DNA of 64,000 nucleotides from Magallana gigas (taxonomy: Eukaryota): the NCBI RefSeq assembly GCF_963853765.1, contig NC_088859.1, positions 45,942,001 to 46,006,000 of the forward strand, written 5' to 3'. Shown piece after piece: positions 20,766 through 58,205 of this stretch; within the stretch, counting starts at the first letter, position 1, and the number at the start of each line of letters is the position of its first letter. Under the pieces are notes generated by a model that was not told the DNA's origin, did not search any database, and was given only the letters and a program-made list of their open reading frames with translations. The translations under genes and the position numbers were made by a program.

Positions 20766-21931
20766 TAGTTATCCATCGAAGAATTTTTTTTCAATTAAAA
20801 ATTGTTCTGTCACTATAAACCGATTTGTTGTATATGATGTGCTTTGCATAAAGCGAGGTTTTTTAAGCCAATACCCAAACAAAATGAAATCCAATGCATG
20901 TCATGAATAAACGTTAACCCGATGACACTGCAATTAGTAGTAGTATTTGCAGAGTTCATAAATGTGGATGGCATGTATTGCATTGTATTTATATTATGCG
21001 ACCCAAGGCATAACGTCTGATTTTTGGTAAATTACAAGTAAAAGATGGCACATGAATAAATAAACTGATTACGTATATTTCTAACAAGAAATCGTTAAAA
21101 ATGTGATAACATAAACAAATCCAGAAACTTGGAAACATTTGATGCAATTTATCAAACGCCACATTCTTTCGGGAATGAAAGTGATTAAAGTTAAAGCAAA
21201 CAACTCCTCCCCACCATCCTGGTACCACAGTTACTATAATGCATGTGTAACTGCATCTTAGGCATACGTTTTGAACAAAGTGGTAACTTATCCAATATTT
21301 CTGTGGTGTAAAGGAAATACGAGATGGCTGCACATCATCATGGTTTTCTATTTCAGACTGCTTGGAGGCCAAGAACAATTTATTTTATTGTTTTATGACT
21401 GGATATCAATAATTTCCATGACAAAAGATAGCAACAAGAGATATCAAACACGCACAATCTTTGAGCCCTTCTTCTTTTTCGTTAAAAAATGCATTCACTG
21501 CGTTGTCTCCTCGGTAAAAAAATAAGATATCAGTATCGTTGTATTCGTTCAAATGAGTTACTGCACAAGAAGACGCATGGTATGGTAATAAATTAATACA
21601 TGTTAGGGATGTTTCATACTTATTTTACTACTTATATAGTTTGCAAATTTTACAAACATCCTTAGGGCGATGAGGTGAATGAGGTGAATTTCCGATCTCA
21701 TGTATCTCGTGATTTGAAGCGCGTGTTCTTAATTAATCAAACTACCCCGATAGCAACAAGCCAAGATATTTTACAAAACTGTTCAACAGAGCGATGGGAC
21801 ATTTACAATTATGTTCTTCCGATCAACAATTCAATCAACAGAACGTTTTTATTCCGATACAGAGGAGATAAAAACAACTGTGACGAGGGAAAAAACAAAT
21901 CAAGTTGAGTTCAGACGGATCGCTTTAATAC

Positions 21932-22031
21932 CTGTCAATCGCTATGGCTGCCAAAGTATTCACCGAGGCACAGACGGAGATTCCTTGAAGAAAAGGCGTC
22001 AACTTACACAGCACTGCACCATACCGCCAGT
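21932..22031 (-). CDS. Receptor A exon 2 ([34 protein letters not shown])
   Basis: 100-nt exon not in the ORF track; acceptor ctcccttacAG, donor GACAG|GTATTA; ECL1 WxxG..C motif and TM3. Confidence 0.92.
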
Positions 22032-24809
22032 CTGTAAGGGAGAAAAAATATCAGACAATGGTTTGGTTAAATATATTTAAATTATCTATTGCTGCCAGTT
22101 CAAAGGACAGAATTTCTAAGGAACCTTTAACAAAATGGTGTTTGTCGTTAAACAGACACATATTCATCATGTTATAAAAAAATCACAATAATTTTTTTGC
22201 AGCTGTAAGCCATTTTGATTGTAATGATACACCTTTCTGTGGAAACATACAAGATGTAATGGCACTTAAATATGAACGGAATGTCATTTCTGTCAGATTG
22301 CAAACGGAAATGATCTGCAACCGCAAACTTGAGCAACGTTTCGCGATGCACGAAACTATCTGGTCTTTGTAACATCTAAATCTTTCAGAAATCGGTACAT
22401 GACTTGAAAAGTTTCTCAAAAACATCTTGATCGAAGAAAACATTTGGAAAACGCATTATTCTGAACAAAGGATTGCACTTTCTGATTGTTTAGTCTCACT
22501 ATCCACCACAGGTCATTACTGTTGTATAAGGTCAGTGCCGATTGGAGTGTACTGGGTTCAATTATCTATTTATCAATTTAATTAACTATATGCATGTGAT
22601 GTAAATGCTAGCATTTTATCTCTGCTTTCCCCTGCGTGAAAAGGATATATGTGCGTTTAATTACGCTGTTCAATTCAATGCCCTAGACATTGTGTCGGGG
22701 TAGCCTTGACCTTTGAAACATGCTTATACACCGAGGCTTTATTGATATTTGAGCCCAGGGTCGATCATCTTTGGATTTTTGTTATAGATTCAGAGTTGCC
22801 TTGTCTTGGACGATCTCTTTCTTTCACCTGTCCAATTAATATCATGTAATCTTGATGAATCTGCAAAATTGTCCTTGTTCCGTAAAATATGAACGTGTTT
22901 TTGAATTTAGAAAATAATGGAATCGCTTAGGGCCTGTACGTATTCTATTTAATTCACGAAAGCACCGTGTTTCTTTCGATGTTAAAGTTGTCAAATGATA
23001 TAACCAGCCTGGAAAAATCGCAGAGAGTCGATGTTTGCAAAATAAAATAAATTTTGCGTCCAATTTCCGGTAGCAAACCATAAATGATCGAAATGTCAAA
23101 GACCGCCAAATCCCATCATTTTAATCATTTATCGAGACAAAGTTGTAGAATATTGTCAATAGATCCCCAAGGCCGTCTTAATCTTGTCTGATCCCGAGTG
23201 AATATAGAAGGACTTGCGTAACATAACTCATTATTGAATGAAATTTGAAAATTTCTAGATAAGCATTGAAACAGATGGACATGGTCTACTTATTTTACAA
23301 CAATTAGTTAAATATCACTCCAAACCTTAGAGAAAGCCATGCCCCATTTCAACTGCTTGGAAGTTCCCAGATAGATACGTCTGGCATTACTAATTATTTC
23401 TGTATGGTCTAATTCCAATCTAAATTTAGTATGTACTACTACATGGTGTACTGTAAATTGGTCTAAATGTCAGATATTTTTTCTCAAAGAACAACTTAAG
23501 CATGAGAATTATTGAACTGACAACATTGGCTTGAAGAAACAGAGAAGGTGATTTGTCAAACTTGAGACTTTCGCTCTGCAGAGGGACATATGAAGGAGTG
23601 TCCTCATCACGTCGTTCGTCGCCTAAAGAGGAACCCTGATGTATTTCATGACTCATAACCGCATCACTGCCATATGGATCCATCAGAGTGACCTTGAACT
23701 TGACCCAAAGGCATCATTAATGGAGTTTTAATTACGAATGAAAACCTTTGATATGAATTGATCAAAATCGAGAGCGATACAAACCGGACAAGAACCGATA
23801 ATAATTCTGAGGCTGTAAAATAAAAGACCCCTATACCATTGCCATTACTGTACCCAGTAAAGACAACTGTACAAAGAAGATAAGGTTAATTTTGCCGAAC
23901 TTTGCCCAAACTTAAAAAAATAAACCTGAAACGAAGCGGGTCATTTTTAAGTTTGTCGTGAAATATTGTAACTTTATCTTGTTAGTCATTTTCTTGTTAA
24001 AATTAAGTTTGATCCCACAAGATTCGTCGCTGGGTAAGGTTTAGCAATACAACCTTACTCTCTAGAAGTAGAAGGTCGTCATATGAACGTGACATATTCC
24101 AACGAACATGTGTGACATACACTTATGATTTGGTTACTGTGCCTAAGCCAAGGTCTCCAGCGACACCGGGGCCCGATGTTAGCGATTTTTATTGTCAAAT
24201 TTAAAATTTGATTTCTTACATGTCAGTTTTCTTATGGTCGGAACTTGAGAATCATTATTCCCTGTGAGAAATTTCTATTCTTAAAGAATTAATTTGGTGC
24301 TTATTTCTTGTCCATTTGACCTTTTTAAAAAGATATAAATTAAAAGATTCCAATCTACTTGACTATATAGAGAGTATAATCTTTTTATTGAAGACGTAGT
24401 CAATGGTTATTATGTGTCAGATATCTTATTCTTTTTTAGGCCAATGCAGAAGTATGGAGTACGAATACCGGAATATGATGTTACATCGGACATTATTCCA
24501 ACATCTCAAGCCATGGTCCGAAGAGCGGACTCCTCCAGGTGGGAGAGTATTGTACATGTTGGCCGTGGTTTGCGCTGATGACATAATGTATGTTATGTCC
24601 TTTATTTGAAACGACTTTTTTTTTGCAACCTATCAATTATAAACTGGTTTGTAGCAATTCATTTTACGACAAAGCTTTTTTTTTTCAATAAATTCGCGAC
24701 AAGAAATATTTGCAATAAAAAGTCCTTGCAAACAACAATGCTATAACAAATTCGTTGTTTAGTAAATTCACGTTTTGGCAATAACGATGATATTAAGATA
24801 CATCATGTA

Positions 24810-26270
24810 AATATCTACATTTTCACATAATTTAGAATAGATAAGAAAAACATACATGTTTTAACATATGAGGCATTTAAAAACAGTAAAGGTAAGGCGC
24901 TTGAATAAAAGTTCTTCTAATTGCAAATAGTATTGACGTCTGTGGGAGGATTGAAACGAAAATAAAAGGCTATATGGAACATATGAATGCCATAAATCGT
25001 CTATCATCCTATTGTTTTGTTTTTTGCTTTTGAACATCTCGAGAACGTCTTGTTTGAGTATCGCCATTATCAATATACATCAAATACAGAATTTACAGTA
25101 TGACACTAGAATAAAGAACTTTAAGATTGAGATTTGAATCCATCAGGTTCAGGTACAGTTGACAAATCATCTTTCTCAGTATCTATTTTTCGTTGACTTG
25201 AAGTACAAAATATTGATTTTCACATGCTCCTAAGCTGTTAAAGTATGAAATTGTATTTCATAATAATAATTTTGGGTTTTCTCTTTCTTTTTAACATTGT
25301 TCTTTATTACTTTGTTATAAATGGATCAAGGTAACCTTATTCTAACTACGTCAATCGGATACGTGGCTGTCTATCATATATATTCATTAAAGTAAACTAA
25401 CAGATTAATTAATTTATACACTAACACTTATTTTTGATGTGCGAAGTTTCATTTGATGAAAATGAATCTTTGTTACCCGATTTAAAAAACAGCATGTTTT
25501 ATCGCACAGAGCAAGATGACGCATGCACAGTTTGCAAACTACTATATCTTTATATCACGCTTACTTTCTTGTGCCTTTCATTTAAACGGCACTATTCAAC
25601 CTGACATCTTATTTGCTCACATAAGTTAGGTACTTCGGAGTTTTCAATTTTTTACCATATCTCTTCGTTGTGAAAACCCTAAACGTCTGATGACGTTTCT
25701 AATCAAATACTGATATTCCATTTTCTTTCGGTCCGCTGATTTGAAAAAAACCCAACTGTTACCGGTACCACTACCCACAAACAATGTACATTTTAACACA
25801 AATGAGCGAATTAAATTTATATTGCTACCACTTCTCGTTTCTCTGTGACGTCAGGCGACGTCATCTTTTTATAAAGTGAATTTTAACGAGAATATCTGTC
25901 TTTAGTTACTGACTTCTGTGCAACGAAATAAATCCCGTCAAAATTTGATACATAGAATATCACGACAATATACAGTCTAACTTGATGTTTTAATATACTT
26001 TTGGTTTTAAGCCCATTCTATAGACACTACATGGTTTATTGTTGACATGACACAGAATCTAGCCGTGCTCCTTGACCTCATTTTCTCAGGATTAAATTTT
26101 TAATGATTCTTAGTTATAAAGGAATATATTTTTTTAATTTTAATTTATTTGAAACTATTGCTCAATTATGTCTACCAAATTTAGTAACGATATGACGCAA
26201 AGTAAAATAGCTATGGCAAAATTCTTCATATGTTTTGATTGACCCTCGTATTGTACATGCATTATTTTCA
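24810..26270 (-). repeat. Intronic block (flank + eroded mariner-type element + flank), homologous to 49985-51742
   Basis: Colinear match to the receptor B intron-1 block when read in gene orientation; right TIR ...GATTGACCCTCG|TA ends at 26248, left TIR eroded near 25350. Confidence 0.8.
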
Positions 26271-29200
26271 TTCATGTATTCTCTACCTTCTGAGATTTAT
26301 GATACTCGGTTGAGTTCAGTATTTCGTAAGAGTTTAGTTCTTGTAGACTTAAAGTCTGTTTTTTATTTTGCTCTAATAATTTTAAAATTCTACTCTAAAT
26401 TTGTCAAAATATTCCCCCAAATGATTCTTTCCAAATGGATTGAGCAATAATCTAAATAACCCATACTATTTTTGAATTACTTTCGGTGCTGTGACAAACT
26501 GGTCCTTGTTCAATATTTATCGAAGATATAGCGGTGCGGGGACCAGTCAGGGACTGTGATTTTCGTTGCTCGGTGTCGTGTAATGATTCCTTCCGGTCTG
26601 TGATTAATATTGATGTCAGAAAGCATTGAGCACCATGTGCGTGGAGCTAAGACGTTTTCACAATGTCCTCCCCAGACTGAATTCGTGAGGATACCGGCTC
26701 ATGTCTGGATTGATAGTTTCACGATGCAATATAACAAGTTTTTTTGTCACTACATCATAGTATTTTACAAAACTTATTGTGTAAGGTGTAAATTATCAGA
26801 AGAGGTACTGTATAGGGGGTTATTTTTCACCCTTTTCTGCCTGCAAAATTGATTTTAATACGCCCAGTTTTAAATTCACACGCTGACAATGAGGGCATGA
26901 GGACCAAAAATAAAACGGAGGCGAATGTTTGCATATATACAGTAGTTCCTCTTATTAGCTTTGTTGAAAAATGAATAAGATAAAAGAGTTGACTTTAAGA
27001 AACATATCCACACTTTAGTGATAGGTGCAAGACTCTTAGAAATTGTTAGTTCGTCACAGATCATCCAAGACCATACAGAAAATAGAAGATCACTTTTGGA
27101 AGCAAAGAGAGAAGTAGAAATAGCAAACAATTAATTAACTATGGGATGTGTAGATTTGTCTCTTTGTATCGCTCAACCAGAATGATAAATGTTAAGGATA
27201 ATGGGCAATTAAGCAATTCAAACGTATATACAGTTGAAGATATTTACTATTTGTTTTTCAGAAATCGTGGCAAACCATCTCATCAGAAAAAAATCAACCG
27301 CCAGAGTAACACGTGTTTGAAGAATGGATGGCTGCTTTATAAATGACTTAACCACGTGTTCAAGAGAGAACTGTCGCTTTATTCAATTCATTACTCAATT
27401 ATATACAGACAAAAAACTCGGATAATTGGATATACTTTTCAGAGCATCATGCCCGGACTATTTTATAGTCTCTAATATTTCATGTTTTAACACCTGAAAC
27501 AGATTATTTCCTACCAGCTCCCATCGACTTTTTTATCGAACGATCTTGAAATATAAATTCGCATTTTCTCAACCTTTTCACTAACTATATTAGGAAATAC
27601 TTGTTTAATTTTTATTTTTTAAAGAGACATTACAAGTTTTCTTTAGACAAATTAATCTATTGCCAAAGCAGCTTTATAGGTGTTTTACTTCCCCTTCAGC
27701 GTTACCGATTTTCTAATTTCCTTGTTGTATTAAAATAGGACGCAGATCATTATTATTAACAGGATATTTAAAACGGTTAAAGAGTTTCCGAAAGGAGACG
27801 GATTCTGATTAAATTTCTACGCTACATGGCCGTCGTAAAGTTCTGTTAGAGATGCAAGATGTCCATTACGACCTACTTGAGCGCCCAGACTTAAAAGCAA
27901 ATGGTGGTTTACGAACGTTCGTTACCCAATCTGAAACTAAGTCAAGTTACATCAACGTTCGAGATAGATGGCGGTTTTGCTGTTCCATTAATGGGACTGT
28001 CTCGTCCACGCATCCGCTCCAGCCCATTCACGGTTTTATCAACGTTGTTTTGCATATAACGGACAAATTAATGGTAAGACGCCTGCTATGAGCTGTCTTT
28101 CAAAATGTCGGCTTCATTGAGAATATCACAAAACGCACTTAACACAGCTTAGCCGCAAAACAATTAGTCAATATGAGTCTTGAGAATAAGTGAGTATTAA
28201 TTTGAAGACATGAAACATTAAAGATTTTTTTAAAGCAAACAAAATTGTCACGAAAATTGAATAATGGTGTTATATAAATAAGAAATGAACTACCAAGAAT
28301 AGATAATATAAATGGTTGACAAAATGGATGGGAAATGGGCCAAGAAAAGTAAATTTTCTACTGACATTTGTTGCAGGTCTTTGACTTGTATCTAAATAAT
28401 TCATTAAATGACCTGTTATACAAAAAAGAACTACCTAAAGAAATAATCAAAAGCGATAGCAAGGAGGAAAAACCATTCGGTTTGTTATAAATAGAAATCT
28501 CGGAAAATTGTAATATTGGAAAACTTTAATTTATGTATGTGGGAAAGCATTTTCTTAATCAACCAAACAAAAGTAAAAGAACTACCCCCTCCAAACAAAC
28601 AAAAAAAGCACACACACCAAAAAAAAAACCCACCAAAAAAGAAAATTAAATAAAAAAACGCAACTAAACTTACATTAAAACAGGTTTTTTTTTAATTATA
28701 TCTGGAAAGGGGGGGGGGGGGTCACAAGCTCTTGCTTTTCTGTTCTCAATATCAATATTGACTCGCAATTTCAAGACACGAGCTATTTTATATTTTGTTT
28801 CACTTTTTTCTGTCTTATTTTTTTTTGTATATTGACAAAATTACACGAACTTGCTCTTTCAAAAACTAATTCTTGGCGAGATGATCACGATTACTGAGAG
28901 AAGTGTTTAATAAGAGACGAGAAACCCCACATATCTACAGGTATGTCACATCAGTAGTTCACCATGTTTAATATATATCATACATGTATTGTTCAGATAG
29001 AGTTGTGGTTGTTATGTTTAAATATAATTAACTTGGTATCACACTATGATAAAAATATTTCTTTTCAATATTAAACAACATATACAAAATACCAGTCTAT
29101 ATGGAAAAATATGGCTGTTGTCTTGCATCACGTATTTTCAGAAAAATTTTGAAAAACGAGACCGCAATATCATGATAGACCTCACGTAATGCAATAAAGA

Positions 29201-29688
29201 TTTCAGATGTCTGGCAATCCAAGAGGTTTATGCAAATTCCACAACGTAAAATATGACTTCATTGATTAATTTTTACGAGCGCACGATTCATATATTCATA
29301 ATACCGCATGTTTAATCTGATTTAATTGACTCTGGTTGGATGCTGCAGCTTAAACAAAGCTTGACGACACAGTTTACAAATTTTAAATATTACGGATCTA
29401 ACGTTGAAGAAAAAAACTTCAATGAAAGATTCACTCATTTATTCTTATTAAAAGTTTTGGTTTTATTTTCTGATTTTGAAAATTTTCTGATAATTTAATA
29501 AAAAATACCCGAATACATATACTCCTGAAACTAGTAAGATTAATCAGAATTAGGTCCTGGCTTTCATACTGAAATAGAAAATCAAATCGAAAACGTGGAA
29601 ACAATTTAAAAATTGTAAGTTTTACCTTAGCATAAGTACCGGATATATTGTTGTTAAGTTAATAGTATGATAGTATCAACTGACTTAC

Positions 29689-29962
29689 CTAAGAATATAT
29701 TAATCATTGTATTGATTGGCATAACGACCAGTGCGACCAATAGGTCTGCCACGGCGAGGTTCACGATGAAAAAGTTGGTCTTGGTGTGCATCCATCGATG
29801 TCTGACCACGACTGCAATAACAGTAAGGTTTCCCAACAATGCAAACAGAAATATGAGAGAATAAGCCACGGAATACACCACTATAATGTCAATGTCGTGC
29901 TTCAGGTCAGGGAAAGAAATGGAGGTCCCGTTCACAACATCACCACTGGAATTTCTTTCCAT
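29689..29962 (-). CDS. Receptor A exon 1 (N-terminus, TM1, TM2); full protein 373 aa
   Basis: ATG with an in-frame TAA 3 codons upstream; GNLTV in TM1, NLAVADLL in TM2; donor TAG|GTAAGT, phase 1. Confidence 0.9.
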
Positions 29963-31764
29963 TACAGTTTAATCATAAACTCTTTCACTGGTAGATGCTT
30001 TTCACCAAAATAAGTGGTTTGTGTAGGGGGGTTATGGCTAGTGTTCCTGGTTTATCTGTCGGGGGAGTTCGCTCTCTGGAATACGCGCGACTACGGCGTG
30101 TTCCGTCGATTGTGGTCCTAGCGGAGAATATGACGGGCTCTAATGTTTTCGCTGTTCGCCTAACGATCTTTTATTTTGTTCTCGTTACTTGATCCTTATT
30201 GATTGGAGGTGTTCATTTTTAAGAAATATTCCTGCTCACAACTTGGAACATTTAAACGATTCAGTGTAACCTGGCACTTCATTTGGTCCAAAGATTTCTT
30301 TTTTATCAATTAACTCAATTATATGCTCCAAGAATTGGAAAGTTTCTTCTGACGTGACCGTGAGTAGGCTTAATGTGCGCAATAAAAAAAAAGTTTTATA
30401 CAAATTTTATTTGCTGATAAAAATCTAAGAACAACATGGCAAGAGTTCAAGCGTGCATTTCGTCCTGATCTCCCTTTTCTAATGAAAATATTTATTTAAT
30501 TGTCTGCATCCAATTTCTCCCCTTCTACCTGATTAAGTTAGAAGACGATGACATCCTTGAAGCTACGATTTTCTGTAATACAAATCCTGTCATAATTCCC
30601 TACGAGTGGACTAAGGGAAGATGCATACGCGGATGGCGACAGACTATAATTATGTCCAGTGCTTTATGGATGGGTAAATCCGCAAATGACGGCGTGGTCT
30701 CTTAACATCAGCCGCCGTGAGCCAAGTACAGTTTTTCTGTGTGCTGACATGTTGTAATTATCCCCTGTAGAACTGTGGAAATTATCATTTTTTATCGTTT
30801 TCTCAATACTTATGGCCTTGTAATTTTATTTCATTTTTTAGATTTTCTATCCCGATGCTGATCAAAGAAATCATGTGTCAAAAGAGGAATGAGAACCTAG
30901 TTCAAGAAAATGACATGTATAATAAAATTATGGCTACTATCTCGTTTTTATCATTTATTCATCGAAAATATTTTATGAGCGAAATAATTTTTATAACTAT
31001 ACTACACAACAAAACCGAGCTAATTTTGATATGATACTGATTATTACACGTTTGAGGGAAAAATTATTTTTACGCACAACTTCAGATTTATCACTCCTCC
31101 CTACACGTGAAAAACGGAACACCCTTAAATCTCATCTCCTACTGTTTTTATCGGAGAAAAGCATTTTGACAATAGCGAGTTGTTCCAATACATTACGTTC
31201 ATGCGAAAGAATCGGAAACGCATGCGTCAACAACAGATTTGTTTTTTATGGCTATCACTTTGAATATTAATCGAAACGAAAGATTATCTTCTTTATTAGC
31301 GCGTCTCTTATAAGATCTCGCTTGTTTTCTATGACATGTAGTAGAACGGCGTCCAAAAACCAGGGGTCGCTGCGGTCAACGCTTGGCGCGTGTAGGATCC
31401 GTCAGAAATAGAGCGTCGCTGGTTTGTTGTATTATTACCAAAATAACTAGCAGAAACATGCAGAATTAAGTGATCCGAGGGTTGCAATGTGTGCTCAGAC
31501 ATGTCAAAACAAAAAAGCTGAAATAAACCACTTACGTTACGTATACAATGGATACGGTATTACCGTGCTCTCGTAAACAACAGCCATTGAACAGCAAACA
31601 CAACTCAACTGAGTATGAATGTTGAAACAATAGAAAAAGTTGAAATTCATCACTGGAATAGACATTGTAATAATCTTAAGACAGTGAATATAACAATATT
31701 CATAAATACATATAAAACAGAAAGTAAGAAAAGTGACTGCATTTAACTGATTTCAGAAAGAGAA

Positions 31765-32280
31765 AACAAGCCGCCTGGGGAACATGATGACTCGCTTCCT
31801 CACACGTCCATTTGTTTCTTGGTTTAGAGAAGGCACGATTTGTTGAACATAAGTTTCTTAGACTTTACTATTGATAGAACGCTTGTACTCTCACAAATCG
31901 TATACATAAAGGCAATCTTGCTTGGAAACATGAAAGTCTCCTACCTTAAGTGCTGAAATTTAGGGTCACTTAATAGAGATCTGCTACTGTGAAAATATAG
32001 AGAAGCTTTAAGGTTTCATCTCAAGTTTGAGAATGTTGGGCCCTACCGTAAATAAAATATATAGGAAATTTTTTTCACGATCTTGCTTGGAAACATCGAA
32101 GTCTCATACTTAGAGGTTAAAATTTCTCAAGGTCACAAGCCAGCAATCAACCACTGCCACTGTGAAAATACGGTGATAGTACCCTCTTTAGTTCGAGAAA
32201 TTCGGACTCTTGTGGAAATACAAAATTTTACTAAAAGAGGGAATGGAACATTTGACCCTAAAACGTCGCAGTCCACTGAC
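31765..32280. mobile_element. Possible decayed Helentron-like element with two ~165-bp units
   Basis: CTTGCTTGGAAACAT...CTGTGAAAATA recurs at 31917 and 32082 (period 165). Confidence 0.35.
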
Positions 32281-35179
32281 AAGTTGTTAAATAATAAGAT
32301 GAAATGTAGGAACATGGAAAAAAACCCAAACAGATATCAAAATTTTAATGTGAATCTCCACCTGCAAAATTCGTTTGCTTGCTGTTGCTTCCGCGCTACG
32401 AGATTTTTTAAAGTACCTAAAAAAGTGCTTTCTGGCTCCAGGGATCTTGGTCCACCTAGTAATGTCTAATTGATTTATGCTTATTTCTTTTTCCTCTCTG
32501 TATAAGACAATGAAATCATCAACAATGAAAGAGGCGTTTTTCTTAAAACATAAATTTTTAAAATTTAAATTGTTCTCATCAAGTATTTAAATTCAGTTTA
32601 ACGAATAAGAACTTTAAGAGTATATTCACATCGAAATAAATTGATCCGTCATTTTTACGATTGTATTGTCAGATAACGAGACTAATTACCATTATTTGAA
32701 GCCACAAGCATGAATGGAATAATATGGGATATCCAATTTGGAGAATTTGAATCGGATATAATAAACTTTTTTGCTGATTAGTTTTCTTAGTAAGGTCCTG
32801 ATGTGTTAGACATCCAACATCTTTAATTATATAGATGGACAAAGCAAGAATGGATTCAGATAGAGATAAAAAGGATACGTGAGGTACTTTGTTTGCCTCC
32901 AGTAGAATAGAAAATATATTGTTTCGATCTGTTTCTTTCTGTGTAAAAACCATTCCATGAAACGTGTCAGTTACAGAAAGTGTCCACCTTCTTCAAACAT
33001 TTCTGATAAATTGGACTAATCTGTCACTTAAGTACAAAGAAGACATTTAGTAAAAATCTAAAACAATTACCACTTCTGTTTCGCCAAAAAGAAATTTTGA
33101 TCGAGTCAACATGTAGGAGTCCTGTTAGGTGCAGGTTTGTTGCTCCCGGTCTGAACAAATTCGGAATTTTTAGACCGGAAGCTACAGACCTGCGTCTAGA
33201 GTACTGTGTTTGGAAGAATATATTTTTGATTAATTTTAATTTTAAAAGTTGTTATTTTTTTGCTTATGGTTTATCATAAAATTATAATACCTGCATGGAA
33301 AACATTCTTTTTATTTTTGATTATCATCAACCAAATGATATAACTTTTCGGACCTTTTGAATACGGAAAATTGCACAAACAAATCAAGTCAAACATATCA
33401 TAAAGCAGCATACAAGCATTCTGTCTTGAAAAGGATTCTTCCAAATTTGTAAATTGTGAAAATTTATATGTGAATACTTCGGACCTGTCATGTAATTACT
33501 GTGCAATTAGCATGAACTGGGCGAAGTCGTGGGCGTCTTTACAATGTGCGCACACATTATTCAGTTGTATTCCATGTCAGTAACCTTTACATTATTATCT
33601 TGGGATTAACGCTGCTGTATCGCTATATTATGAATCAAATATATATTAAACATTGTAAGCATACCGTTGTTTTTTTCAATTCTTAATGATTATATGCATC
33701 TCTTCATCACCTCAGTGCACTTACAATAACACACTGGATAGTCTGTTCATAACCACACAATGCTGACTATTTAGGAATAGGGGTCAATTGTAATGACAAC
33801 TAAATCTAATGGGACTCTTTTACCCTCGTCTAGTTTTCAGAAATACATATTCTGTAATGCACCGTCTTTGTTCCCGCACCCACTCCAATCCCAACAAGTT
33901 TTCATAAAGCATCAATTTCAATCAAGGGGAACAACAATCAGATACAGTTATTTTACCCCTGTGTTGAGAAAAACTTATAAACATGATAATGAAAATCAAG
34001 GCTTTAGATTAATAGTTCCAAAAGCCCCCTCGTCCGGACATAAAATTCTGAGCTTCCGCTCGCTAGCATAACACGTGATGTGTAGCACATTTATTTAACA
34101 AAATGTATTGGGTTTGATTATCTCTCCGTTTTTAATGGCAATTGAAATGAATGTGACCACATTGCAAAGAGCAAGACCAATCTCAGGCTGACACGCCATT
34201 TCTGAAATGAACATAAAATAAAAAATTTGCGATTTTATTTTATTCTGTTGGCAGTGGTCAACGAAATGAGAAGATGAAGAGGTGATGAGCCTGAAAACTA
34301 CGTTTGATTCCTGTAACAGAGGAAGTGGAGCACAATGAAGTTTTAAATGTAGGGATTGGTTTTCAGAAAGAGCTGGTGGGTGGGAAGGGTTTAAATGTGG
34401 GAGTGGGAGCAAAACCGTCATGCGACTTGGGGGCTTTATAGTATTTTGGAAATGGAAGTGGGATTTAAACATCTTAATAGTTAATAAGAAACACATCCTA
34501 TGCTTTACATGTCTGCCTGCTGCACAATTAGAAACCATCTTTCCCATACGGAGGCCAAAATAACGAATTGTCTGTTGTCCTGTAAGCAAGCGGTAAACCA
34601 GGGTAGTGACCCTAAATACCCAGCATTCTTTAGTATAATAAGGGATTACTTAGATAGATAATTTGAAGTATTTCTTGACATCTCAATTGGTCAAGAAAAA
34701 TAAACCTGAAACAAGGGCACCGCAAAGCGGAGCATCCCCTCGCGAAATGAAAACATTGTGCGGGGAAATGCATTATTCAGAAATAAACACTCATGTAATT
34801 GAAGAGACCAAATATTGAACTTGTTAAAAAACATTTGATTTAAAATATTTCGTTTATTCCTATCCCCAGCACGCTCTGTGTGTATCCATGGGGGATAGGT
34901 GCATTTACGTGGTTGTACAATTGCTCCCATTACTAGGGAAAACACACCACAAACGTGTTGAATTTTAGTAATATAGTTTAATAAATTCTCTTTATCCAGT
35001 GACATACATGACGCATGTAGACAATTAGTGTAGGCAAATTTAAGTTTCATATTGAAAAGGAAACGTAGCTAAGATCTGGCGATTTATAGTCTGCTTTACG
35101 AGAAAATTCGAGTTAACATGTAATTTTAAACCCAATATTTTAAAAAGAGTAACATATATGTACATGTATGTATCTTCAG

Positions 35180-35725
35180 CGATTAAAATGAAATGAATTC
35201 CCGGTTAATCATGTTGACGATAATTGTCAAAGTCTCTTCTGAAATTATGAACCTGTTCTTCTCTAAGTAATTCGTTAAATATAGCCCGAAATACGGCCCA
35301 GACGGCTGCTTGTTTCGATTAAATAAGGGTGAACTTAATCTCCTGCTTGCTCAGTTTTTCACTTTGGACATCCTTTCAACTCCCCATATCTCAAAAATGT
35401 TTGCCTTTTACCTTTACAGGGCTTACATCCAACAAAATATCAAGTTGTTGATTTGAAATGTTTACTTTCACGAACCGGAAGTCGTACATAACATTTCTTA
35501 GTGTTGTAATTTTAACGATATCTTAAAAACTTTATAACGAAATTCCTTGAAAATAAATAGGGGTTGTCCTTTAAATATGCTTATGAAGTTTGATACACAT
35601 GCATGGAAGGGTTTTCTTTAAATTTTGCTAAAAAGGCTGAAAAAGACACACACACATACATACACACACACGCACAGCAGCGATGCTATATCCCCCTCGA
35701 AACAAGTTGCGTGAGGGGATAATAA
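35180..35725 (+). mobile_element. 3' part of a non-autonomous Helentron/pearl-like element
   Basis: (AC/ACAT)n microsatellite at 35646-35674, then terminal hairpin ATCCCCCTC...GAGGGGAT (35690-35720); left boundary uncertain. Confidence 0.5.
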
Positions 35726-35737
35726 CAAGACTGTCAA

Positions 35738-37039
35738 AACTAGAGACCCATGGGCTACATCGCTTACCCCAACAACAGTTCTCGTATCATTCTATTTTAA
35801 AATATTGTAAAACACTCATATAATCAAAGAATTGTCAATAAAATGAGATACACAAAAATAAGCCTTATATTTAAGACATCATACCCTAAGATCTAAGATG
35901 CGTAAACCGACTGACCAATCTTATTTTTCTAGCCCTCAACGTTTTAAAGAATATACAATTGTGGTATTAACTATATAATAAACAATTCTAAAAAGTGAAA
36001 GAACGTCACTGTGACTTTAATATAAGGATATGAAGATATAAAGATGCTTACAAAGTAAAATAACTAAACGTAGCATTGCATTTCTTAAGAAAAATGTTTT
36101 TAAACATTTTCCCTAATATATACCTGTGTTGAAATTTGAACCCATCTTGGGGCCCCAGTATTGGTCTAGGGGTCATGGTTTCATCAATTTAAAATTCATA
36201 TTATTTTAGAATGTACCATGAATATTAATTCACAAATTGTAGCAATGTAGTTCTTGGGAAGATATTAAAAACACATTTCCTATATGTTTCAACGTTGAAC
36301 TTTGAACCCTCTCGGGACTTGAGTATTGGTTGGGGGTCACGTTTTTAATAATTTAGAATCTAGAATATCTTAGGATGCTTGCATAGTAATATCACAAATT
36401 GTAGCAATAAAGTTCTTGGGAAATTTAAAAAAAAAACATTTTCCTTACATACCTCTGTTATACTTTGAACCCCTCTTTGAGCCCCAATTTTGATCCGGGG
36501 GGTCACGGTTTTAACAATTTATAATCTACAATACTTGAGTATGCTTGCATAGTAATATCACAAACGTAGCATTTACTTTTTGAGAAGATTTTTAAATATT
36601 GCCCCTATATATTTCGATGTTAAACTTTGAATTGGTACCCAGTTTTGGTCCGGGGTCACCAGTTTAACAATTTAGAATCTTCATGTATGCAAACTTTGTT
36701 ATGAATATTGGCATTTCTGGTGCAGTGGTTCTTGAGAAGATAATATACTTCTATTTCGGATTTGAACATATTTTATTATGCAAAATAATATTTACATAAT
36801 AGGATTGGGCAGCAGGCAAAGCCTATTTAAGCCTTCTATACTTCTATTTCGTAATAATGAACCTTTTAAAAAGGGTTTCGCCCCCTTAAAAACAAATTAG
36901 CCTTCCCATAAGGTTGTCTTGCACCAAGTTTGGTTCAATTTGGCCCATTGGTTCAAAGAAAAGATCAAAAATGTGAAAAGTTTACAGAGAGACGGACAAA
37001 CGGACGGACAAAAAGTGATAGGAAAATCCCACTTGAAGC
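35738..37039 (+). mobile_element. Non-autonomous Helentron (HINE-like) element carrying ~4 diverged 162-166-bp satellite monomers
   Basis: 5' box AACTAGAGACCCATGGGCTACATCGCTTACC; TTTGAA anchors at 36135, 36301, 36464, 36626; 3' box with CCAAGTTTGG and a (GACG/GACA) microsatellite. The organisation resembles oyster Cg170-type satellite-bearing Helentrons (recalled from the literature, not searched). Confidence 0.7.
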
Positions 37040-38944
37040 GAAACTATGCAAATTTGAGCAGTTAGAAAAAGTTATTCTCTAAGGTATCCCACTCTTCAAT
37101 GTTCTTGTATCAAAAATTTCATGAAAAGTATATCGTGGAAAACTGTAGACAAAACACACTTAAAAAATACAATGATAATGGGAGGTCAGTGTTCAACCCT
37201 CTTAGTTATGGCCAATTTAATTTGACCTTTTGCACCTAAAATGCGATTTCAGCCTGATTAGGATTTATTGTCAGTTATTTCTTCAAATATATATATATAT
37301 ATATGGCTTCAAAGGCAAAATTGGCTTTTAAAAATTCAGACATTTTATATTTATTTGCATGATTTTATGCTAAACGTGTATCACTATCTCAATATATAAT
37401 TTTGTACATGTCACACAGAGCCTATAGAACATGTCACCAACATATCAAATGTTACAAATGTGAATAATGAATAAAGTATAATAAAAAGAAAAGTATATTG
37501 AAAATTCATAAATTTACTTGTTTCTGTCATTTTTGTCTAAAACCCTTCCGCACAAAAAATAGTTCCCCCTAAAACTTGTTTGTTTCTTGAATTCAAATGG
37601 ATTTTCCTTATGAATATTGTTTATTTATGAAATAATGATCTTTCTTTGATGATCAAATAAATAAAATCATATTCATTTAAAATTTAATGATAATCTGCGC
37701 AATGAAATCAAAACTTGAGGAGTGGGTTACCATAAAGAGAAAGAATAAATCCAGATGACAATAGACAATCGTTAGGAGAAAAACAATAAGCTACAAGCCA
37801 TTGTCAGAATCCGCTAATAACAAAAATAAGATGGTTGTGGGACAAATTAAAGGGGAAACATCGAGTAAGATGTGTCTTTAAATGCATACAAGAAAAGAGA
37901 AATAATGCAAAGAGGTATGTAAGAACGATAAACAGCCGAGTTATTCTCCATTGTCCAACAAAACATCGATGCACATGAAGCACCGATCCATCTTTTTTAG
38001 CCTTTTTATGACAATTTATTGCTTAAAAAAATTTAATGCTATGTTAAATCTTGCCAGACTGAAATCAAATGTACGTGTACACACTCTCATGCGATTTTAA
38101 TGCCGCTTGACTGAATTTGATAAAATATGTACATGTAATTTTTATGTTGGTCTTTCATTTCATTCTCCATATTAGAAAATGGCAAAATGTTATTCAAGTT
38201 CTTTTTCTCGACCTAAATGCTATTTGTTTTTCTGTAAAGTTGTCAAATTCAACGGCATTTTTATAAATGAGTTTCTTTTTTTTTTTAAAAGGAGAACATT
38301 GGTGAAGTACTTATACTCACTTGTTAAATCACGTTTCCAAATAAACGATTTTCGTAAATGTTTCAGTACCAGATTCTATGTAAGATGAATTCAATGAGCT
38401 ATTCATAATTGTCCCAGGACTAGACCCATTTAACTACACATGGTGCATGTTTTTGTACTCTTTAAATTAAACGTTAGGATCCTCAGGAGTAAACATTCAC
38501 TATGAGGCATATATTGGATATCGCATACCTTTGTGAATCTCTTCTAACAAAAATAAAGGAGAAACTGGCAGCAAATCCGAAGTTATTTTACAAAACACTA
38601 CCTAAGATGGTAAACTCGAAAATCTCATCGATGTGGTATTTACAGAACTAAAACACTGTTCTAGTTCGATGAAAATAAGATATTTCTTGTTTAATAAATG
38701 ATGTGATGACTCTGAATTAACAAAACAGTTGCTTTTGTTCAAGAATACATCGTTAGAAAATATGCTCTGTCTATGTTATTATTTCCTATTTCTTAAAAAA
38801 TGTGTCATTTTAATAGTGGCAACTTTCTCTTCATCTCAATAAAACATTTATGACGATTCGGTTGTTGATTTTTATATTGACTTGGAGAGGGCAAGCCATA
38901 TTGAAAACATGTTTCAGAAAGAATTCCGCGAATAATTGGTATAT

Positions 38945-39590
38945 TTTAAGCGGATCCAAGCAATATTAGAAGTGATAGGATTTGGTGTCAGTTCTTCGTA
39001 AAATCCTCAATTTTATATAGGAATCCTAATTGTTTCTTAGTCCAAATAAATCATTGAAACCTCTTTACCTTCTAATGAGGTTTTTAATAATCACATCGTA
39101 TACGAAAACATGACACCCCTTGCCACAGTTACAAGGAAAAAAGGTAAATTGAAAAATCACAGTAGGTTAAAACGGTTACTACCATTGTTTTTCACATATC
39201 CAAGTATAATTTTTTTTAATAGAAAAAATATAAAAATTCGCGAATCAGTTTATATACTTTAAACGGATCCAAGCAATATTTGAAAAGATAGCTTTTAGTT
39301 CTTCGTAAAATCCTCAATTTAAAAAACTAACGTTAATTGATTTAAATAACAGGAAAACGTATACAAAAAATATTGTAAAAATGATAACGCTTGCCTTAAC
39401 TTTTTCAAAATGTGTAGTTGTTTTCCAAATTATGGACATCTCTTAACCTTTTAAAATATTTAAAAATAATCATATCGTATATGAAAACATTACACCCCTT
39501 GCTACGGAAACAAGGGAAAAGAGAAATTGAAAAATTTCAGTGGTTTAAAACGGTTACTACTGTTGGTTTTCCAAATATCCAAGTATCATT
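38945..39590. repeat. Diverged tandem duplication (~270-330-bp units)
   Basis: CGGATCCAAGCAATATT, GTTCTTCGTAAAATCCTCAATTT and AAAACGGTTACTAC each occur twice, colinearly. Confidence 0.7.
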
Positions 39591-40582
39591 CTTTGAGCAA
39601 AACTTTCTGTTCTTATTATTCAACAAGAAAGAAGTATTGTTACTTAATCCGAAAGTAATGTCTATACGTAAATAGTTTGAAAGGTTAATAAACTGATATC
39701 CTCCTTCAAATATATTATTGTAGATTCAAAGTAGTTGGTTACGGTATCAATAAGATTTCATTTAAAAATTACAAATATATTTATTCCTCTTCTTTTTATC
39801 TTGTTGCCTATAAAACGGTTTTCAATTTTCATTGACATGAATTAAAAAAACAATCCTTGATAAATCGTATATGTTCGAAAAGAAGTCTTGAATATAGTGT
39901 AGTAATGATGGTTACAACAATGAAATCTTAAATATTTAAAATTATTCTTATTTCAGCAAAATGTTTTAATTTGTTGCATTTCTTTTCATTTCATCACGGA
40001 TGGCTAAATGTTGCGACCGCATACAGTGCCTGATTCTGGAGTTCCAACGAAAATAAAATGTGTCGGAGTTCCTTACACTGAACCCGTGTGGGTAATGGTG
40101 ATCTGGCGTCAGTTATGTTTTGAGTAGAAGCATTCTTTTCCTTTAAGATTGGTACTGTAGAATCGATATCAAAACCCAAAGTATATATATTATTATTGAT
40201 TTATTTAGTTTTAAAATGTACCTTGTTCTTCGGAAAAGTTACTTGTACCTAATGATGCATCGGTAATTGAATATTAGTTGCTAAAGTAGCAATATGTGTA
40301 TTTAGTTAATCTCTTGCTGGAATTAATTGTGCAAAACAGAGTATCCATTATAGGTAAACATCGAGACTCATCGGGTCAAGATTTCAAAGGACGCAGCTGC
40401 AGTATCTGGTTAGCGAATTAGCCTATTTTCAGATGAGAGAAGTTAACGCCTTTGGAAAAGACGGTTAATTTTTTTTTCATCTAAAGGGCTCCAAATAAGC
40501 TCCTTTGAGACTTTAAACAATGGTAATAGATCTATGTATATCGAGGGAGTGGGATAGTAATAATTATATTCAGGCTATAACG

Positions 40583-51284: not shown

Positions 51285-54108
51285 AAGTCAGAATAAAGTT
51301 ATCTTCGATCCATGTATAACAAAGTTATTAAAAAGATGAAAAAGAAAGAGAAAGCCCGAAAGTGTTTTTATGAAATACAATTCCAATCTTTAACAACTTA
51401 CAAGAAAGTGAAAATCAATATTTTGTACTAAAGGCAATGGAAAACAGATACTGAGAATATTGAATTGTCAATTGTACATGATGGAACCAAGTCCAAGTCT
51501 TTATGTTCTCGATTCTAGTGTCAGACTGTAAATTCTGTATTTCATGTACATGTATATTGATAATGGCGATACTCAAACAAGACGTTCTCGAGATGTTCAA
51601 AAGCAAAAAAGAAAAGAAAACAAAACAAATCAAAACAATAGGATGATCGACGATTTGTGGCACTCATATGTTCCAGTTTTTAAAACGCCTTTTATGTCAA
51701 AACTTGTATGTCATTTTTATATTATATGAAAATGTAGATATATTCTTGAGCTTTTTCTAAAATTCACCGTTATAGAATGCTTAGGCTTGATTGTTGAAAT
51801 TTTATAATTTTGTTATGATAGTAGAAGTTTTATTCATCGTATACAGTACATTTTCAAAAATAAAAGTTATTCTACAATTCGATTTCGAAACATAAAAAAG
51901 TGCAAAAATACATTTATTGGCGTTATCCTTCAAATAAGCATGTCTATGCAAGTCTTGACTTAAGTTTTTAAAAATCAACGCAGAAAATACAAACTTGAAC
52001 TGTTTACAACTCTGATTATTAAAATGTTATTCTGTTCATGGCATCATTGTTTTGGAAAAAGTTACATCATTAATCTTAAAGCATTAAAATCAAAACCGTT
52101 TGGGCATCTTTTTAACCGAATCAGTGGCACATTTTTCTGGACGTGAGTGATTTCCCTGTCTACGTGACTGCGTAGATGAGATGTAATAACAAAAAATAAA
52201 TCTTGTTAGAATTATTATAACAGAGGGAGTATGATATAGCTGTCCAGGCGACCCTAGACGAATTTGTCAACGCTAGTGACTGCTTCCGATGGGAATGGTA
52301 ATTATTCCTGGAGTTTGACAGAAGATGAAGTACAGGGCTAAATATCGAAGACTGGTGGCTCCTTGGATAGTCAAAAGTTTTCCCACAAAGCCATTTTTTA
52401 AATTATTATTTCAGAGCTAATGATGCCAATTGTGTTTACGGTTTTTGATTCCCTTGCAACTTCGGTTTGCAATATGAGAGAGACGACTTTAGTTTAAAAG
52501 TACTATTCATAAAATATCTTTTAACCACACCAGAGGTAAACCCACTTTTAAGAAAATTTTAAACACTATAAGCCTATCTGGACAAGAACGCGTTCCAGTG
52601 TTTTTCTGATAAAGAAAAAATCAAATTGTGGTTGGAAAAATTTTAACCATTTTCTAAATGTCGCTGAAAATCGTGATTTTATGGTCTACTTTCAATTTGA
52701 TTTGGGTTTATTTCTTCGGTAATAAAGAAAATACCGTAGGTACCTAATCTTTAAGCAAATTTTCAAATAGTGGATATTGAAAAAAAAAATACATTACGGT
52801 GTTAAGGAGAAAAATGTGCTAATGAGATGAAATGCAATGGCATCGAAGATGCACGTAATGCATTAATTCTGTTGGGTGAAGACAATGCTTGAGAGATCGG
52901 AATTTATTGATTCATCCTATAAAACGTGTTGCATTGGCATTAAACTAATTCTATTCCTTCCGATTAAGGATACCAATGTTCCAAATCATTTTAGACATAA
53001 ACTTGCGCGTTCTAGGAATCTAATCATTTGAATTGCATGACAAAATATCTCTGAATTTTTGGGTCGAATAAGCAGCAAGTTCATGGGAATTGGGATCATA
53101 AGGAGTTAGCGTGTGGAGTGATTGGTCTTATTTATTTTTGCAGACATGTTTCACACCGAGACCAACTGAAACACTGATAGGTTGTAATGAGTTATAAAGG
53201 GGACAATACATACTTAACAAAGCAGAATTCAATACAGCGTTCTCATTTTTTGTCTGTAACGATTTCCCTGTATATAAATCTTTGGTAATGAGATATCTTT
53301 ATTTAATTATCCTCACCCTCTTGTCTTCATTAATAAACGAATAGATAAAAAGAATGTATAGCCTTCAGATACGTGTATATAGCTCCCCTCCGCCAACCAC
53401 TGATATAAAGCGACAGATCAATAAATATCATTTATTAGAGAGCTAACGACTTACATCTTAGAACATGGTCATTCATTATATTCAATATTTAACCAGTATC
53501 AATTTCCGCGAAATTAATTGAGCAAGGTTAATTAATGGAGGGGTGAACACTCTCCACATCGTTTACTTCTCGTTATCATTATAGGAGATTTTATATATGG
53601 ACAATTTGCTTTGCTAGCGATTAAGAATGTCACGATGTATAGACATTATCTACAAACTTTTAATTGTTTTTTTTGTAATCGATTTCAGTATGAAATATTT
53701 ACATTGATCTACTAAGCATTTCTCAAGAAATATAACTGTGTTTCTTTATCGATAGGTTTTGCTCACACTATTAGTAATTGGTTTTATCTTTAAAACGCAG
53801 CAATTATATGTACCACTTTATTTCATATTGCACGGTTCTAAGATGTAGTTTTCGAAAAAGTCTCATATTACATGACCACTTGCATTATCATTTGGTACAA
53901 TATTCAGAACTTAAAAATAAGGTTTATCAACAATACATCGTGTAATAATTGGCATTGACCCGTATTAGATTACTCGTTTACGTAGTCTTCTCATCATTTT
54001 TTGCTAAATGAGTTGACGTAAATGAGAAACAGCACTCTAAACATACAAATCTAATTCAACCTTTGGTTTCCAGAAAAAAGAAAATTGATTTGAAATTTTA
54101 TAATCTAG

Positions 54109-58172: not shown

Positions 58173-58205
58173 GGGGGGGTGGGGTGGGGTGGGGGGGGGG
58201 GGGGG
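58173..58205 (+). repeat. G-rich tract (G7-T-G4-T-G4-T-G15), G-quadruplex-capable
   Basis: Direct reading. Confidence 0.7.

What the first reader, a model, noticed from the sequence alone, without database searches (positions are those of the whole stretch)
24810..51742. Both receptor genes carry the same transposon-plus-flanks block in intron 1, apparently more similar than their exons
Seen: 26270->24810 (receptor A intron 1) and 49985->51742 (receptor B intron 1) are colinear in gene orientation. They share the upstream flank (TGCATGTACAA-TA), the same mariner-type insertion with shared TIR variants (AAAACATA, TTGCCATAG) absent from the 3531 copy, and ~450 bp of downstream flank with long exact runs such as TGTATATTGATAATGGCGATACTCAAACAAGACGTTCTCGAGATGTTCAAAAGCAAAAAA. 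By eye the block is roughly 75-80% identical, while exon 2 is only about two-thirds identical. Inference: it is too similar to date from the original gene duplication. This points to later ectopic gene conversion or duplication between the inverted paralogues, or to a larger composite mobile element that landed in equivalent introns. It also forms a chromosomal inverted repeat ~24 kb apart that could invert the shared upstream region.
Basis: partly seen in the sequence, partly recalled or inferred. Interest (0 to 1): 0.7.

Follow-up and report, generated by a model that had tools for sequence, protein, structure and literature searches.

The report
Intron segment copied between old receptor paralogues
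Two neighbouring, very anciently duplicated oyster neuropeptide-receptor genes each carry, in their first intron, the same 1.5-kb piece of DNA (an old transposon relic plus unique sequence on both sides), which was copied from one intron to the other long after the genes diverged; this is a small local inverted duplication, real but fairly ordinary.

Summary
Genes A (-, 29962..19507) and B (+, 48970..60055) are head-to-head, three-exon SIFamide/NPFF-type GPCRs. They are 47% identical in protein, and their four-fold sites are 30% identical, so dS is saturated. Each has its own orthologue in Saccostrea, and the two lineages split before the bivalve orders.

Block A (26280->24781) and block B (49974->51773) are colinear in gene orientation and 85% identical over 1087 aligned columns (K2P 0.16-0.20). 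Each block holds about 30 bp of 5' flank, one old TA-flanked 1-kb MITE, and about 500 bp of 3' flank. The MITE family has at least 772 candidate matches in the genome. The 3' flank occurs exactly twice in the 564-Mb genome. The rest of both introns is unique and cannot be aligned between A and B. Contigs from independent runs confirm both copies.

Best reading: a later, homology-independent inverted copy of an intron segment, with the MITE as a passenger. It dates to about the time congeners split (dS about 0.2). A composite mobile element, ancestral retention and a net inversion are not supported. One point stays unexplained: a 140-bp core is 97% identical (p about 3e-4). It is either a younger conversion tract or a constrained element. 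Donor and recipient are unknown. Interest is modest.

The parts
24781..26280 (-). Block A: the shared segment in intron 1 of receptor gene A (1500 bp)
   Evidence: BLAST chains; curated alignments; tiled across both junctions by independent contigs
49974..51773 (+). Block B: the shared segment in intron 1 of receptor gene B (1800 bp, including a later nested insertion)
   Evidence: held by 20 runs from 7 studies; contig L054 covers 48092-50392 at 98.4%
26251..26280 (-). Shared 5' flank in A (about 30 bp, ending TGCATGTACAA before the TA). Its counterpart in B is 49974-50000.
   Evidence: 13 identical bases next to the element, with homology fading after about 27-30 bp. Twelve other family copies have unrelated flanks.
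25349..26248 (-). Old copy of the TA-flanked Tc1/mariner-like MITE in A (900 bp; internal deletion; 3' TIR eroded)
   Evidence: alignment to 13 family copies; best other genomic copies are only 76-78% (5' half) and 66-70% (3' half) identical
50003..51284 (+). The same MITE copy in B (about 200 bp missing after the 5' TIR; nested insertion; 3' TIR retained, followed by AA instead of TA)
   Evidence: 56 sites where A=B but differ from the family, against 51 A-only and 31 B-only
50420..50714 (+). B-specific nested 295-bp MITE (TIR CAGGCACGTAGC, G/C homopolymer runs). It is absent from A, so it most likely inserted after the copy event.
   Evidence: at least 2445 genomic candidates, best 83%
24781..25346 (-). 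Shared unique 3' flank in A (566 bp, including an A-only stretch of about 80-90 bp)
   Evidence: 85.7% over 449 columns; only two genomic copies
51287..51773 (+). Shared unique 3' flank in B (487 bp)
24975..25112 (-). Highly conserved core of the flank in A (about 97% identical to B 51512-51675; 61-nt perfect run 25080->25020)
   Evidence: sliding identity 0.96-0.97 against 0.81-0.90 elsewhere; permutation p about 3e-4; no RNA fold or Rfam match
51512..51675 (+). The same core in B (carries 6-bp and 20-bp insertions relative to A)
19507..29962 (-). Receptor gene A, CDS exons 29962-29689, 22031-21932, 20254-19507 (373 aa); intron 1 = 29688-22032
   Evidence: model built; exon limits confirmed by spliced congener transcripts L051-L053; P0002 373 aa, 97% identical
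48970..60055 (+). Receptor gene B, CDS exons 48970-49273, 54109-54208, 59368-60055 (363 aa); intron 1 = 49274-54108
   Evidence: same intron positions and phases as A; Saccostrea orthologue P0026 has the same three-exon layout
3531..4593 (-). Young reference copy of the same MITE family (1063 bp, TA on both sides, 31-bp perfect inverted match at its ends including the TA). It lacks the A/B flanks.

Best explanation
A segment of about 1.5 kb of intron 1 was copied at the DNA level from one receptor gene into intron 1 of the other, 24 kb away and in inverted orientation. This happened long after the two genes had diverged. The segment held about 30 bp of unique DNA, an already old and immobile MITE, and about 500 bp of unique DNA. 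The MITE was a passenger, because both of its flanks travelled with it, so this was not transposition of the MITE. No homology surrounds the block in either intron, so the copy most likely arose by a homology-independent route: a break in one intron repaired by synthesis on the nearby template, or a replication template switch, ending in end joining. Landing in the equivalent intron, colinear with the gene, is best seen as a tolerated accident, since introns are where such insertions survive. The two copies then decayed independently at a roughly neutral rate (K about 0.16-0.20, many indels, one B-only nested MITE). The exception is a 140-bp core that stayed or became about 97% identical.

Shown: two copies only; both TE flanks shared; uniform divergence; ancient paralogy; no other intron homology; both copies real.

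Inferred: the repair or replication mechanism, the neutrality of the block, and the coincidence of placement. The direction of the copy (A to B or B to A) is unknown.
For: - Age gap. A and B are 47% identical in protein and their four-fold sites are 30% identical, with dS undefined. A and B sit in separate clades together with Saccostrea, Mytilus, scallop and Haliotis sequences. dS to the Saccostrea orthologues is 0.9-1.7. The block has K2P 0.16-0.20 in all four sub-blocks, close to dS 0.20-0.22 between gene A and congener transcripts.
- Copy number. The 3' flank matches only itself and its partner in 564 Mb, by BLAST with either copy and by a sequence profile.
- Single MITE insertion. Both junctions are shared, whereas 12 other family copies have unrelated flanks next to TA. 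There are 56 shared derived sites in the TE. No other scored genomic copy matches A above 78%.
- No surrounding homology. Word-7 BLAST of the whole loci finds only the block and the exons. The remaining parts of both introns are single-copy apart from one 90-bp repeat.
- Not present in the Saccostrea orthologous introns.
- Real in independent assemblies.
Against: - No outgroup with an empty site was available, so the donor, the recipient and the junction structure (microhomology, filler) are not seen, and the mechanism is inferred by exclusion.
- Placement in the equivalent intron of the paralogue, in gene-colinear orientation, has a chance of only a few percent under random local insertion. 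That is small, though unremarkable for a case picked from about 250,000 scanned windows.
- The 97% core shows that the block has not simply decayed neutrally.
- A two-copy mobile element with eroded ends cannot be strictly excluded.
- The genome search scores only the best candidates and would miss copies below about 65% identity.
Confidence: 0.6

Rival explanations
1. Low-copy composite mobile element. The block is a larger transposon (or a MITE mobilised with adjacent DNA through cryptic ends) that hopped locally and happened to land in the other gene's intron 1.
For: DNA transposons often reinsert nearby. The block contains a bona fide TA-flanked MITE of a family with at least 772 candidate matches in the genome.
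Against: There are exactly two copies in the genome, by BLAST and by profile. The block ends (GAATGA... / ...CGTTAT) show no inverted repeat and no target duplication on inspection. The block starts about 30 bp outside the MITE's intact 5' TIR, so the MITE's own end was not used. The MITE copy was already old and 3'-eroded in A.
Confidence: 0.12
2. Classical homology-driven ectopic gene conversion. Both introns already shared homologous sequence, for example independent insertions of the same MITE family, and a conversion tract homogenised them and spread into the flanks.
For: The MITE family is abundant (three copies in this 64-kb window), so two independent insertions are plausible. The 140-bp core at 97% identity looks like a later short conversion tract between the copies.
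Against: Conversion cannot copy 500 bp of unique flank on one side and 30 bp on the other without homology beyond them, and none is detectable. Paralogue divergence is saturated, so no ancestral homology was left to anchor a tract.
Confidence: 0.1
3. Footprint of a staggered-break inversion. An inversion with breakpoints in the two first introns duplicated the breakpoint sequence in inverted orientation. It swapped promoter and exon 1 between the receptors and was later reversed by recombination between the then-identical repeats.
For: The geometry and size fit. The two copies are inverted and bracket a 23.7-kb segment. In Drosophila, inverted duplications of ancestrally unique sequence at inversion breakpoints range from 46 bp to about 1.9 kb with about 88% identity (PMC1885836). 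Both introns have the same phase, so a swap would keep the reading frames.
Against: Exon 1 of A pairs with exons 2-3 of A, and likewise for B, exactly as in Saccostrea and in three congener transcripts. The net number of inversions is therefore zero, and two events must be assumed where one suffices.
Confidence: 0.07
4. Ancestral intron sequence retained in both paralogues by purifying selection since the original gene duplication.
For: A truly conserved intronic element does exist in gene A (27752-27890, 73% identical to Saccostrea), so conserved intronic elements occur at this locus. The 140-bp core is unusually conserved.
Against: Most of the block is a decaying MITE whose divergence equals that of the flank. 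The block is absent from both Saccostrea orthologous introns. The gene duplication predates the bivalve orders.
Confidence: 0.02

Closest known systems
Small intrachromosomal inverted segmental duplication / templated ectopic insertion during break repair or replication template switching (SDSA with end joining; FoSTeS/MMBIR-type events; named from general knowledge)
   Same: Two copies only. Kilobase size. Nearby, in cis and inverted. Breakpoints are unrelated to the ends of the transposon inside it. There is no flanking homology. The copies decay independently afterwards.
   Different: The junctions cannot be inspected without an empty site. The copy lies in the equivalent intron of an ancient paralogue, which is unusual but not required by the mechanism.
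Interlocus (ectopic) gene conversion between paralogues
   Same: Non-coding sequence of two paralogues is much more alike than expected from their age. The 140-bp core at 97% identity resembles a short conversion tract.
   Different: The paralogues had no residual homology to pair on (dS saturated), and no homology surrounds the tract. The exons were not touched.
Inverted duplications at inversion breakpoints from staggered breaks (Ranz et al. 2007, PLoS Biol 5:e152; PMC1885836)
   Same: Inverted copies of ancestrally unique sequence. Size within the reported 46 bp to 1.9 kb. Identity similar to the reported 88%. The copies bracket a defined segment.
   Different: The bracketed segment is not inverted relative to the outgroup or to congeners.
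Stowaway-like / Tc1-mariner-derived MITEs
   Same: The element inside the block has a TA target duplication and terminal inverted repeats, is about 1.06 kb long with no long ORF, and has hundreds of copies.
   Different: The duplication of the block was not a transposition of this element. An autonomous partner and its transposase were not sought.

Membership tests
Tc1/mariner-type non-autonomous element (MITE) | TA target-site duplication at both ends | tested here: met
   All 12 family copies examined, plus the copy at 3531-4593, read TA|CGAGGGTCAAT...ATTGACCCTCG|TA with unrelated flanks. A has TA on both sides. B has TA at the 5' side and AA at the 3' side.
Tc1/mariner-type non-autonomous element (MITE) | Terminal inverted repeats | tested here: met
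   31-bp perfect inverted match at 3527-3557 / 4597-4567. The TIR is conserved across the family.
Tc1/mariner-type non-autonomous element (MITE) | Short, non-coding, many copies | tested here: met
   1063 bp. No ORF of at least 90 aa within 3531-4593. At least 772 first-look candidates, and 40 scored copies at 90-96% identity.
Tc1/mariner-type non-autonomous element (MITE) | Shares its ends with an autonomous element that encodes a DDE/D transposase | not tested
   No search for an autonomous partner was made. The superfamily assignment rests on the TA duplication and the TIRs only.
Interlocus gene conversion | Homologous sequence on both sides of the converted tract | tested here: not met
   Word-7 BLAST of both loci finds only the block and the exons. 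The adjoining intron DNA is single-copy.
Interlocus gene conversion | Tract more similar than the surrounding paralogous sequence | tested here: met
   85% in the block against 30% at four-fold sites. Within the block, a 140-bp core at 97%.
Interlocus gene conversion | Copies group by species rather than by locus in a multi-species tree | not testable with these tools
   No congener intron sequence could be obtained. The contigs found were transcripts or stopped short of the block.
Dispersed composite transposon | Flank plus element recurs at unrelated loci | tested here: not met
   Only the two copies were found, by BLAST from either copy and by profile search (third hit E=0.5).
Dispersed composite transposon | Terminal repeats and a target-site duplication at the ends of the block | tested here: inconclusive
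   None seen on inspection of the boundary sequences. The boundaries are uncertain by about 10 bp after roughly 17% divergence.
Inversion-breakpoint inverted duplication (staggered breaks) | Two inverted copies of ancestrally unique sequence, up to about 2 kb, bracketing a segment | tested here: met
   Blocks at 24781-26280 (-) and 49974-51773 (+). Size range taken from PMC1885836.
Inversion-breakpoint inverted duplication (staggered breaks) | The bracketed segment is inverted relative to the ancestral order | tested here: not met
   Exon 1 of A matches exon 1 of the Saccostrea A orthologue, and likewise for B. Congener transcripts join A exon 1 to A exons 2-3.
Rhodopsin-type neuropeptide GPCR (SIFamide / NPFF receptor-like) | 7tm_1 domain, and orthologues named as such | tested here: met
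   Precomputed PF00001 on all hits. NCBI names the Saccostrea, Mytilus and Haliotis relatives 'neuropeptide SIFamide receptor-like' and a scallop relative 'neuropeptide FF receptor 2-like'. The ligand is not tested.

The most novel reading that the evidence does not exclude
The two inverted blocks are the scar of a staggered-break inversion whose breakpoints lay in the equivalent, same-phase first introns of the head-to-head receptors. That inversion exchanged promoter plus exon 1 (N-terminus to TM2) between two anciently diverged neuropeptide receptors and was later flipped back through the new inverted repeat. The swapped state might survive as a polymorphism or in a related oyster. A milder variant of this reading: the 97%-identical 140-bp core is a cis-regulatory element that the copy event handed from one receptor to the other.
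Probability: 0.07. Interest if true: 0.7.

Novelty: new member of a known kind. Interest (0 to 1): 0.33.

Why it matters
The locus is a clean, datable example of kilobase-scale DNA moving between the introns of neighbouring genes that share no usable homology. The passenger transposon acts as a built-in marker showing that the event was a segment copy and not a transposition.

It is also a caution for annotation and dating. Shared intron repeats in paralogues need not reflect common descent of the introns. Conversely, a transposon 'insertion shared by two genes' need not mean that the insertion predates the gene duplication.

If the 140-bp core proves to be constrained, the locus would show a regulatory element being handed from one neuropeptide receptor to its ancient paralogue. 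If it is a conversion tract, it shows that 24-kb-spaced inverted copies keep exchanging sequence. Otherwise the finding is an ordinary small segmental duplication.

Tried and rejected
- **Palindrome centre.** I asked whether the inverted repeat at 40.5-42.5 kb marks the centre of a large inverted duplication. It is a high-copy repeat (997 candidates). Rejected.
- **RNA gene in the core.** There is no Rfam match at E<=1. Folding energies on both strands and for both copies are no better than shuffles (z +1.1 to +2.5). Rejected.
- **Coding exon or small ORF in the core.** Indels of 6 and 20 bp between the copies break every frame. Rejected.
- **Orthologous introns in Saccostrea cucullata (L037, L038).** Only the exons, one conserved element in intron 1 of gene A, and repeat fragments align. 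The block is not there. With dS above 1 this cannot separate absence from decay.
- **Congener introns.** The contigs for P0002 and P0003 are spliced transcripts. Exon 1 contigs of gene B either belong to the same or a near-identical species (L054-L056) or end 170 bp into the intron (L057, 87% identical). The 15-kb ENA contig for P0077 had no DNA available.
- **Exact look-up of five ORFs from the blocks.** None is in the collection.
- **Exact scan of JGI metagenome contigs with 28 nt of the core.** No hit.
- **Sequencing-run search.** It returned only the same species and oyster metagenomes, no sister species. The reads tool therefore served only to confirm block A. Those contigs are too short to test orientation, so the inversion-polymorphism screen was not possible.
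- **First MAFFT alignments.** The global alignment of the whole blocks and the first multiple alignment misplace B's 5' end. The distances are inflated and were replaced by those.
- **Findings search by words.** Nothing found.
- **N run at 10247-10542.** Left untouched.
Full report
**Setting.** The window is G000:C7:45942001-46006000 of a 564-Mb, 29-contig oyster assembly, 33% G+C, with one N run (10247-10542) that I left alone.

Two rhodopsin-type GPCR genes lie head to head.
- Gene A is on the minus strand, with coding exons 29962-29689, 22031-21932 and 20254-19507 (373 aa).
- Gene B is on the plus strand, with exons 48970-49273, 54109-54208 and 59368-60055 (363 aa).
- Both have GT/AG introns at the same two positions and in the same phases: after TM2, and inside the DRY motif.

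The model for A is confirmed by spliced transcripts of congeners, whose exon limits fall on the same bases (L051-L053), and by a 373-aa congener protein that is 97% identical (P0002). Sources name the relatives 'neuropeptide SIFamide receptor-like' or 'neuropeptide FF receptor 2-like'.

**The observation.** Self-BLAST and a more permissive, gene-oriented BLAST of the two whole loci show one colinear chain of matches between the first introns: A 26280->24781 and B 49974->51773. Apart from the exons themselves, nothing else matches.

Read in gene orientation, each block consists of four things:
- About 30 bp of 5' flank, of which 13 bases next to the element are identical (TGCATGTACAATA).
- One copy of a TA-flanked element with the terminal repeat CGAGGGTCAATCAAAA... 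(A 26248-25349, B 50003-51284).
- About 500 bp of 3' flank (A 25346-24781, B 51287-51773).

The element family is a 1063-bp non-coding MITE with at least 772 first-look candidates. Of these, 40 were scored, at 90-96% identity to the copy at 3531-4593. Every copy examined is bounded by TA and has unrelated flanks.

After the event, each copy changed independently:
- A lost an internal piece and most of its 3' TIR.
- B lost about 200 bp behind the 5' TIR.
- B gained a nested 295-bp MITE (50420-50714) of another abundant family.

**How similar, compared with what.** In curated pairwise alignments the four sub-blocks are 83-86% identical in aligned columns, with K2P 0.16-0.20. Over 1087 columns the identity is 85.0%.

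The coding sequences are far more diverged:
- 47% identical in protein.
- 52.8% identical in nucleotides.
- 31% identical at third codon positions.
- 30% identical at 69 four-fold sites, which is random level.
- NG86 dS cannot be computed.
- Even exon 2, the best-conserved exon, is 70.7% identical.

**Age of the genes against age of the block.**
- Both genes have their own orthologues in Saccostrea cucullata (P0005 for A, P0026 for B).
- In a maximum-likelihood tree, A groups with Saccostrea-A, a mussel, a scallop and an abalone sequence (support 100/99). B groups with Saccostrea-B and another mussel sequence (90/92).
- The gene duplication therefore predates the bivalve orders.
- dS between this oyster and Saccostrea is already 0.9-1.7, and apart from one short conserved element their introns do not align.
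- By contrast, dS between gene A and three congener transcripts is 0.20-0.22, or 0.16-0.17 at four-fold sites. That is about the divergence of the block.
- The block was therefore copied roughly when these congeners separated, at about a seventh of the Saccostrea distance. It cannot be a relic of the original duplication.

**Not a dispersed repeat, and not an artefact.**
- Searching the whole genome with the 3' flank of either copy returns only the two copies, plus one 41-bp A-rich match.
- A sequence-only profile of the two flanks returns the same two copies, with a third hit at E=0.5.
- The TE parts of A and B are closer to each other than to any other scored copy, which reach at most 78%. 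They share 56 derived sites, against 51 A-only and 31 B-only.
- The remainder of both first introns is single-copy DNA, apart from one 90-bp repeat in A.
- Independent data hold both copies. Twenty runs from seven studies contain the B stretch. A Logan contig runs from upstream of B exon 1 into the block at 98.4% identity (L054). Contigs of four runs tile block A across the 5' boundary, the TE/flank junction and the 3' boundary.

**Mechanism.** Because both flanks of the MITE were copied with it, the event was not a transposition of that MITE. It was a copy of a chromosomal segment whose ends lie in unique DNA.

- Classical gene conversion needs homology beyond the tract, and there is none.
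- I saw no terminal repeats or target duplication at the block ends, and there is no third copy, so a composite transposon is unlikely. A two-copy element with eroded ends cannot be strictly excluded.
- The size, inverted orientation and unique-sequence content match the inverted duplications that staggered breaks leave at inversion breakpoints in Drosophila (46 bp to 1.9 kb, about 88% identity; PMC1885836). An inversion between same-phase first introns would even keep both reading frames. However, exon 1 of A still pairs with A exons 2-3, and B with B, exactly as in Saccostrea and in congener transcripts. That reading would therefore need an inversion followed by a reversal.

The most economical account is a homology-independent duplicative insertion. 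A break in one intron was repaired by copying a nearby template, or the replication machinery switched template, and the product was sealed by end joining.

The placement in the paralogue's equivalent intron has a chance of a few percent under random local insertion. My estimate is a target of 3-6 kb within about 60 kb, times one half for orientation. That is unremarkable for a case picked out of a very large scan, and introns are where such insertions survive. I could not determine which copy is the donor.

**What is left unexplained.** Identity is not uniform along the block. A core (A 25112->24975, B 51512-51675) is 96-97% identical, with a 61-nt perfect run, whereas the rest of the block is 81-90% identical. 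Shuffling the mismatches reaches this in about 3 of 10,000 trials.

The core:
- Does not fold better than shuffled sequence.
- Matches no Rfam family.
- Cannot be a conserved ORF, because of 6-bp and 20-bp indels between the copies.
- Has no third copy in the genome.
- Is not recognisable in Saccostrea.

I lean to conversion (roughly 50:30, with the remainder chance). Intron sequences from congeners would decide.

**Verdict.** The feature is a small, old, local inverted segmental duplication with a passenger MITE, lying between the first introns of two anciently diverged receptor genes. It is a new example of a known kind of event. It is of modest interest, with one open sub-question (the core) and one low-probability but attractive alternative (an inversion scar).

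Noticed in passing
window 27752-27890 (intron 1 of gene A); L037:11802-11940: A single-copy non-coding element is conserved at 73% over 140 bp with the equivalent position (about 1.5-1.8 kb after exon 1) of the Saccostrea cucullata orthologue, although synonymous sites between the species are near saturation. It is a candidate intronic regulatory element. It is not present in gene B.
   Followed up: partly
window 54195-57278 (intron 2 of gene B): A tandem array whose unit resembles the end of exon 2 plus its splice donor (...IAVDR|GTAA). It is seen as a ladder of self-matches and in the read-through translation. An earlier finding of this scan already describes it (s1-359005).
   Followed up: partly
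window 50420-50714: A 295-bp MITE with terminal repeat CAGGCACGTAGC and long G and C homopolymer runs, nested in the B copy only. It has at least 2445 first-look candidates in the genome; the best match is 83% identical.
   Followed up: partly
window 40544-42521: A roughly 2-kb palindromic structure between the two genes (arms 74-80% identical). It is built from a high-copy repeat (997 candidates; hits often come in clustered, tandem or inverted groups elsewhere). It is unrelated to the receptor blocks.
   Followed up: partly
window 3531-4593: A young, intact copy of the 1063-bp TA-flanked MITE. It is 96% identical to its best relatives on other chromosomes, which suggests recent activity of the family. 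The element carries several ACGT-core palindromes (TGACGTCA-like).
   Followed up: partly
window 29963-31232: Congener transcripts (L052, L053) align without a gap from at least 31232 down to the end of coding exon 1. Gene A therefore has a long unspliced 5' UTR of at least 1.27 kb, which is 92.5-93.3% identical between species while synonymous sites differ by about 0.2.
   Followed up: no
window 26845-26947: A repeat of about 90 bp with many copies (78-84% identical) across all chromosomes. It is the only repeated piece detected in the upstream part of intron 1 of gene A.
   Followed up: no
window 5392-5479 and 60875-60958: A short (about 70-85 bp) repeat, 94-100% identical, present near both ends of the window in both orientations. 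Not examined.
   Followed up: no
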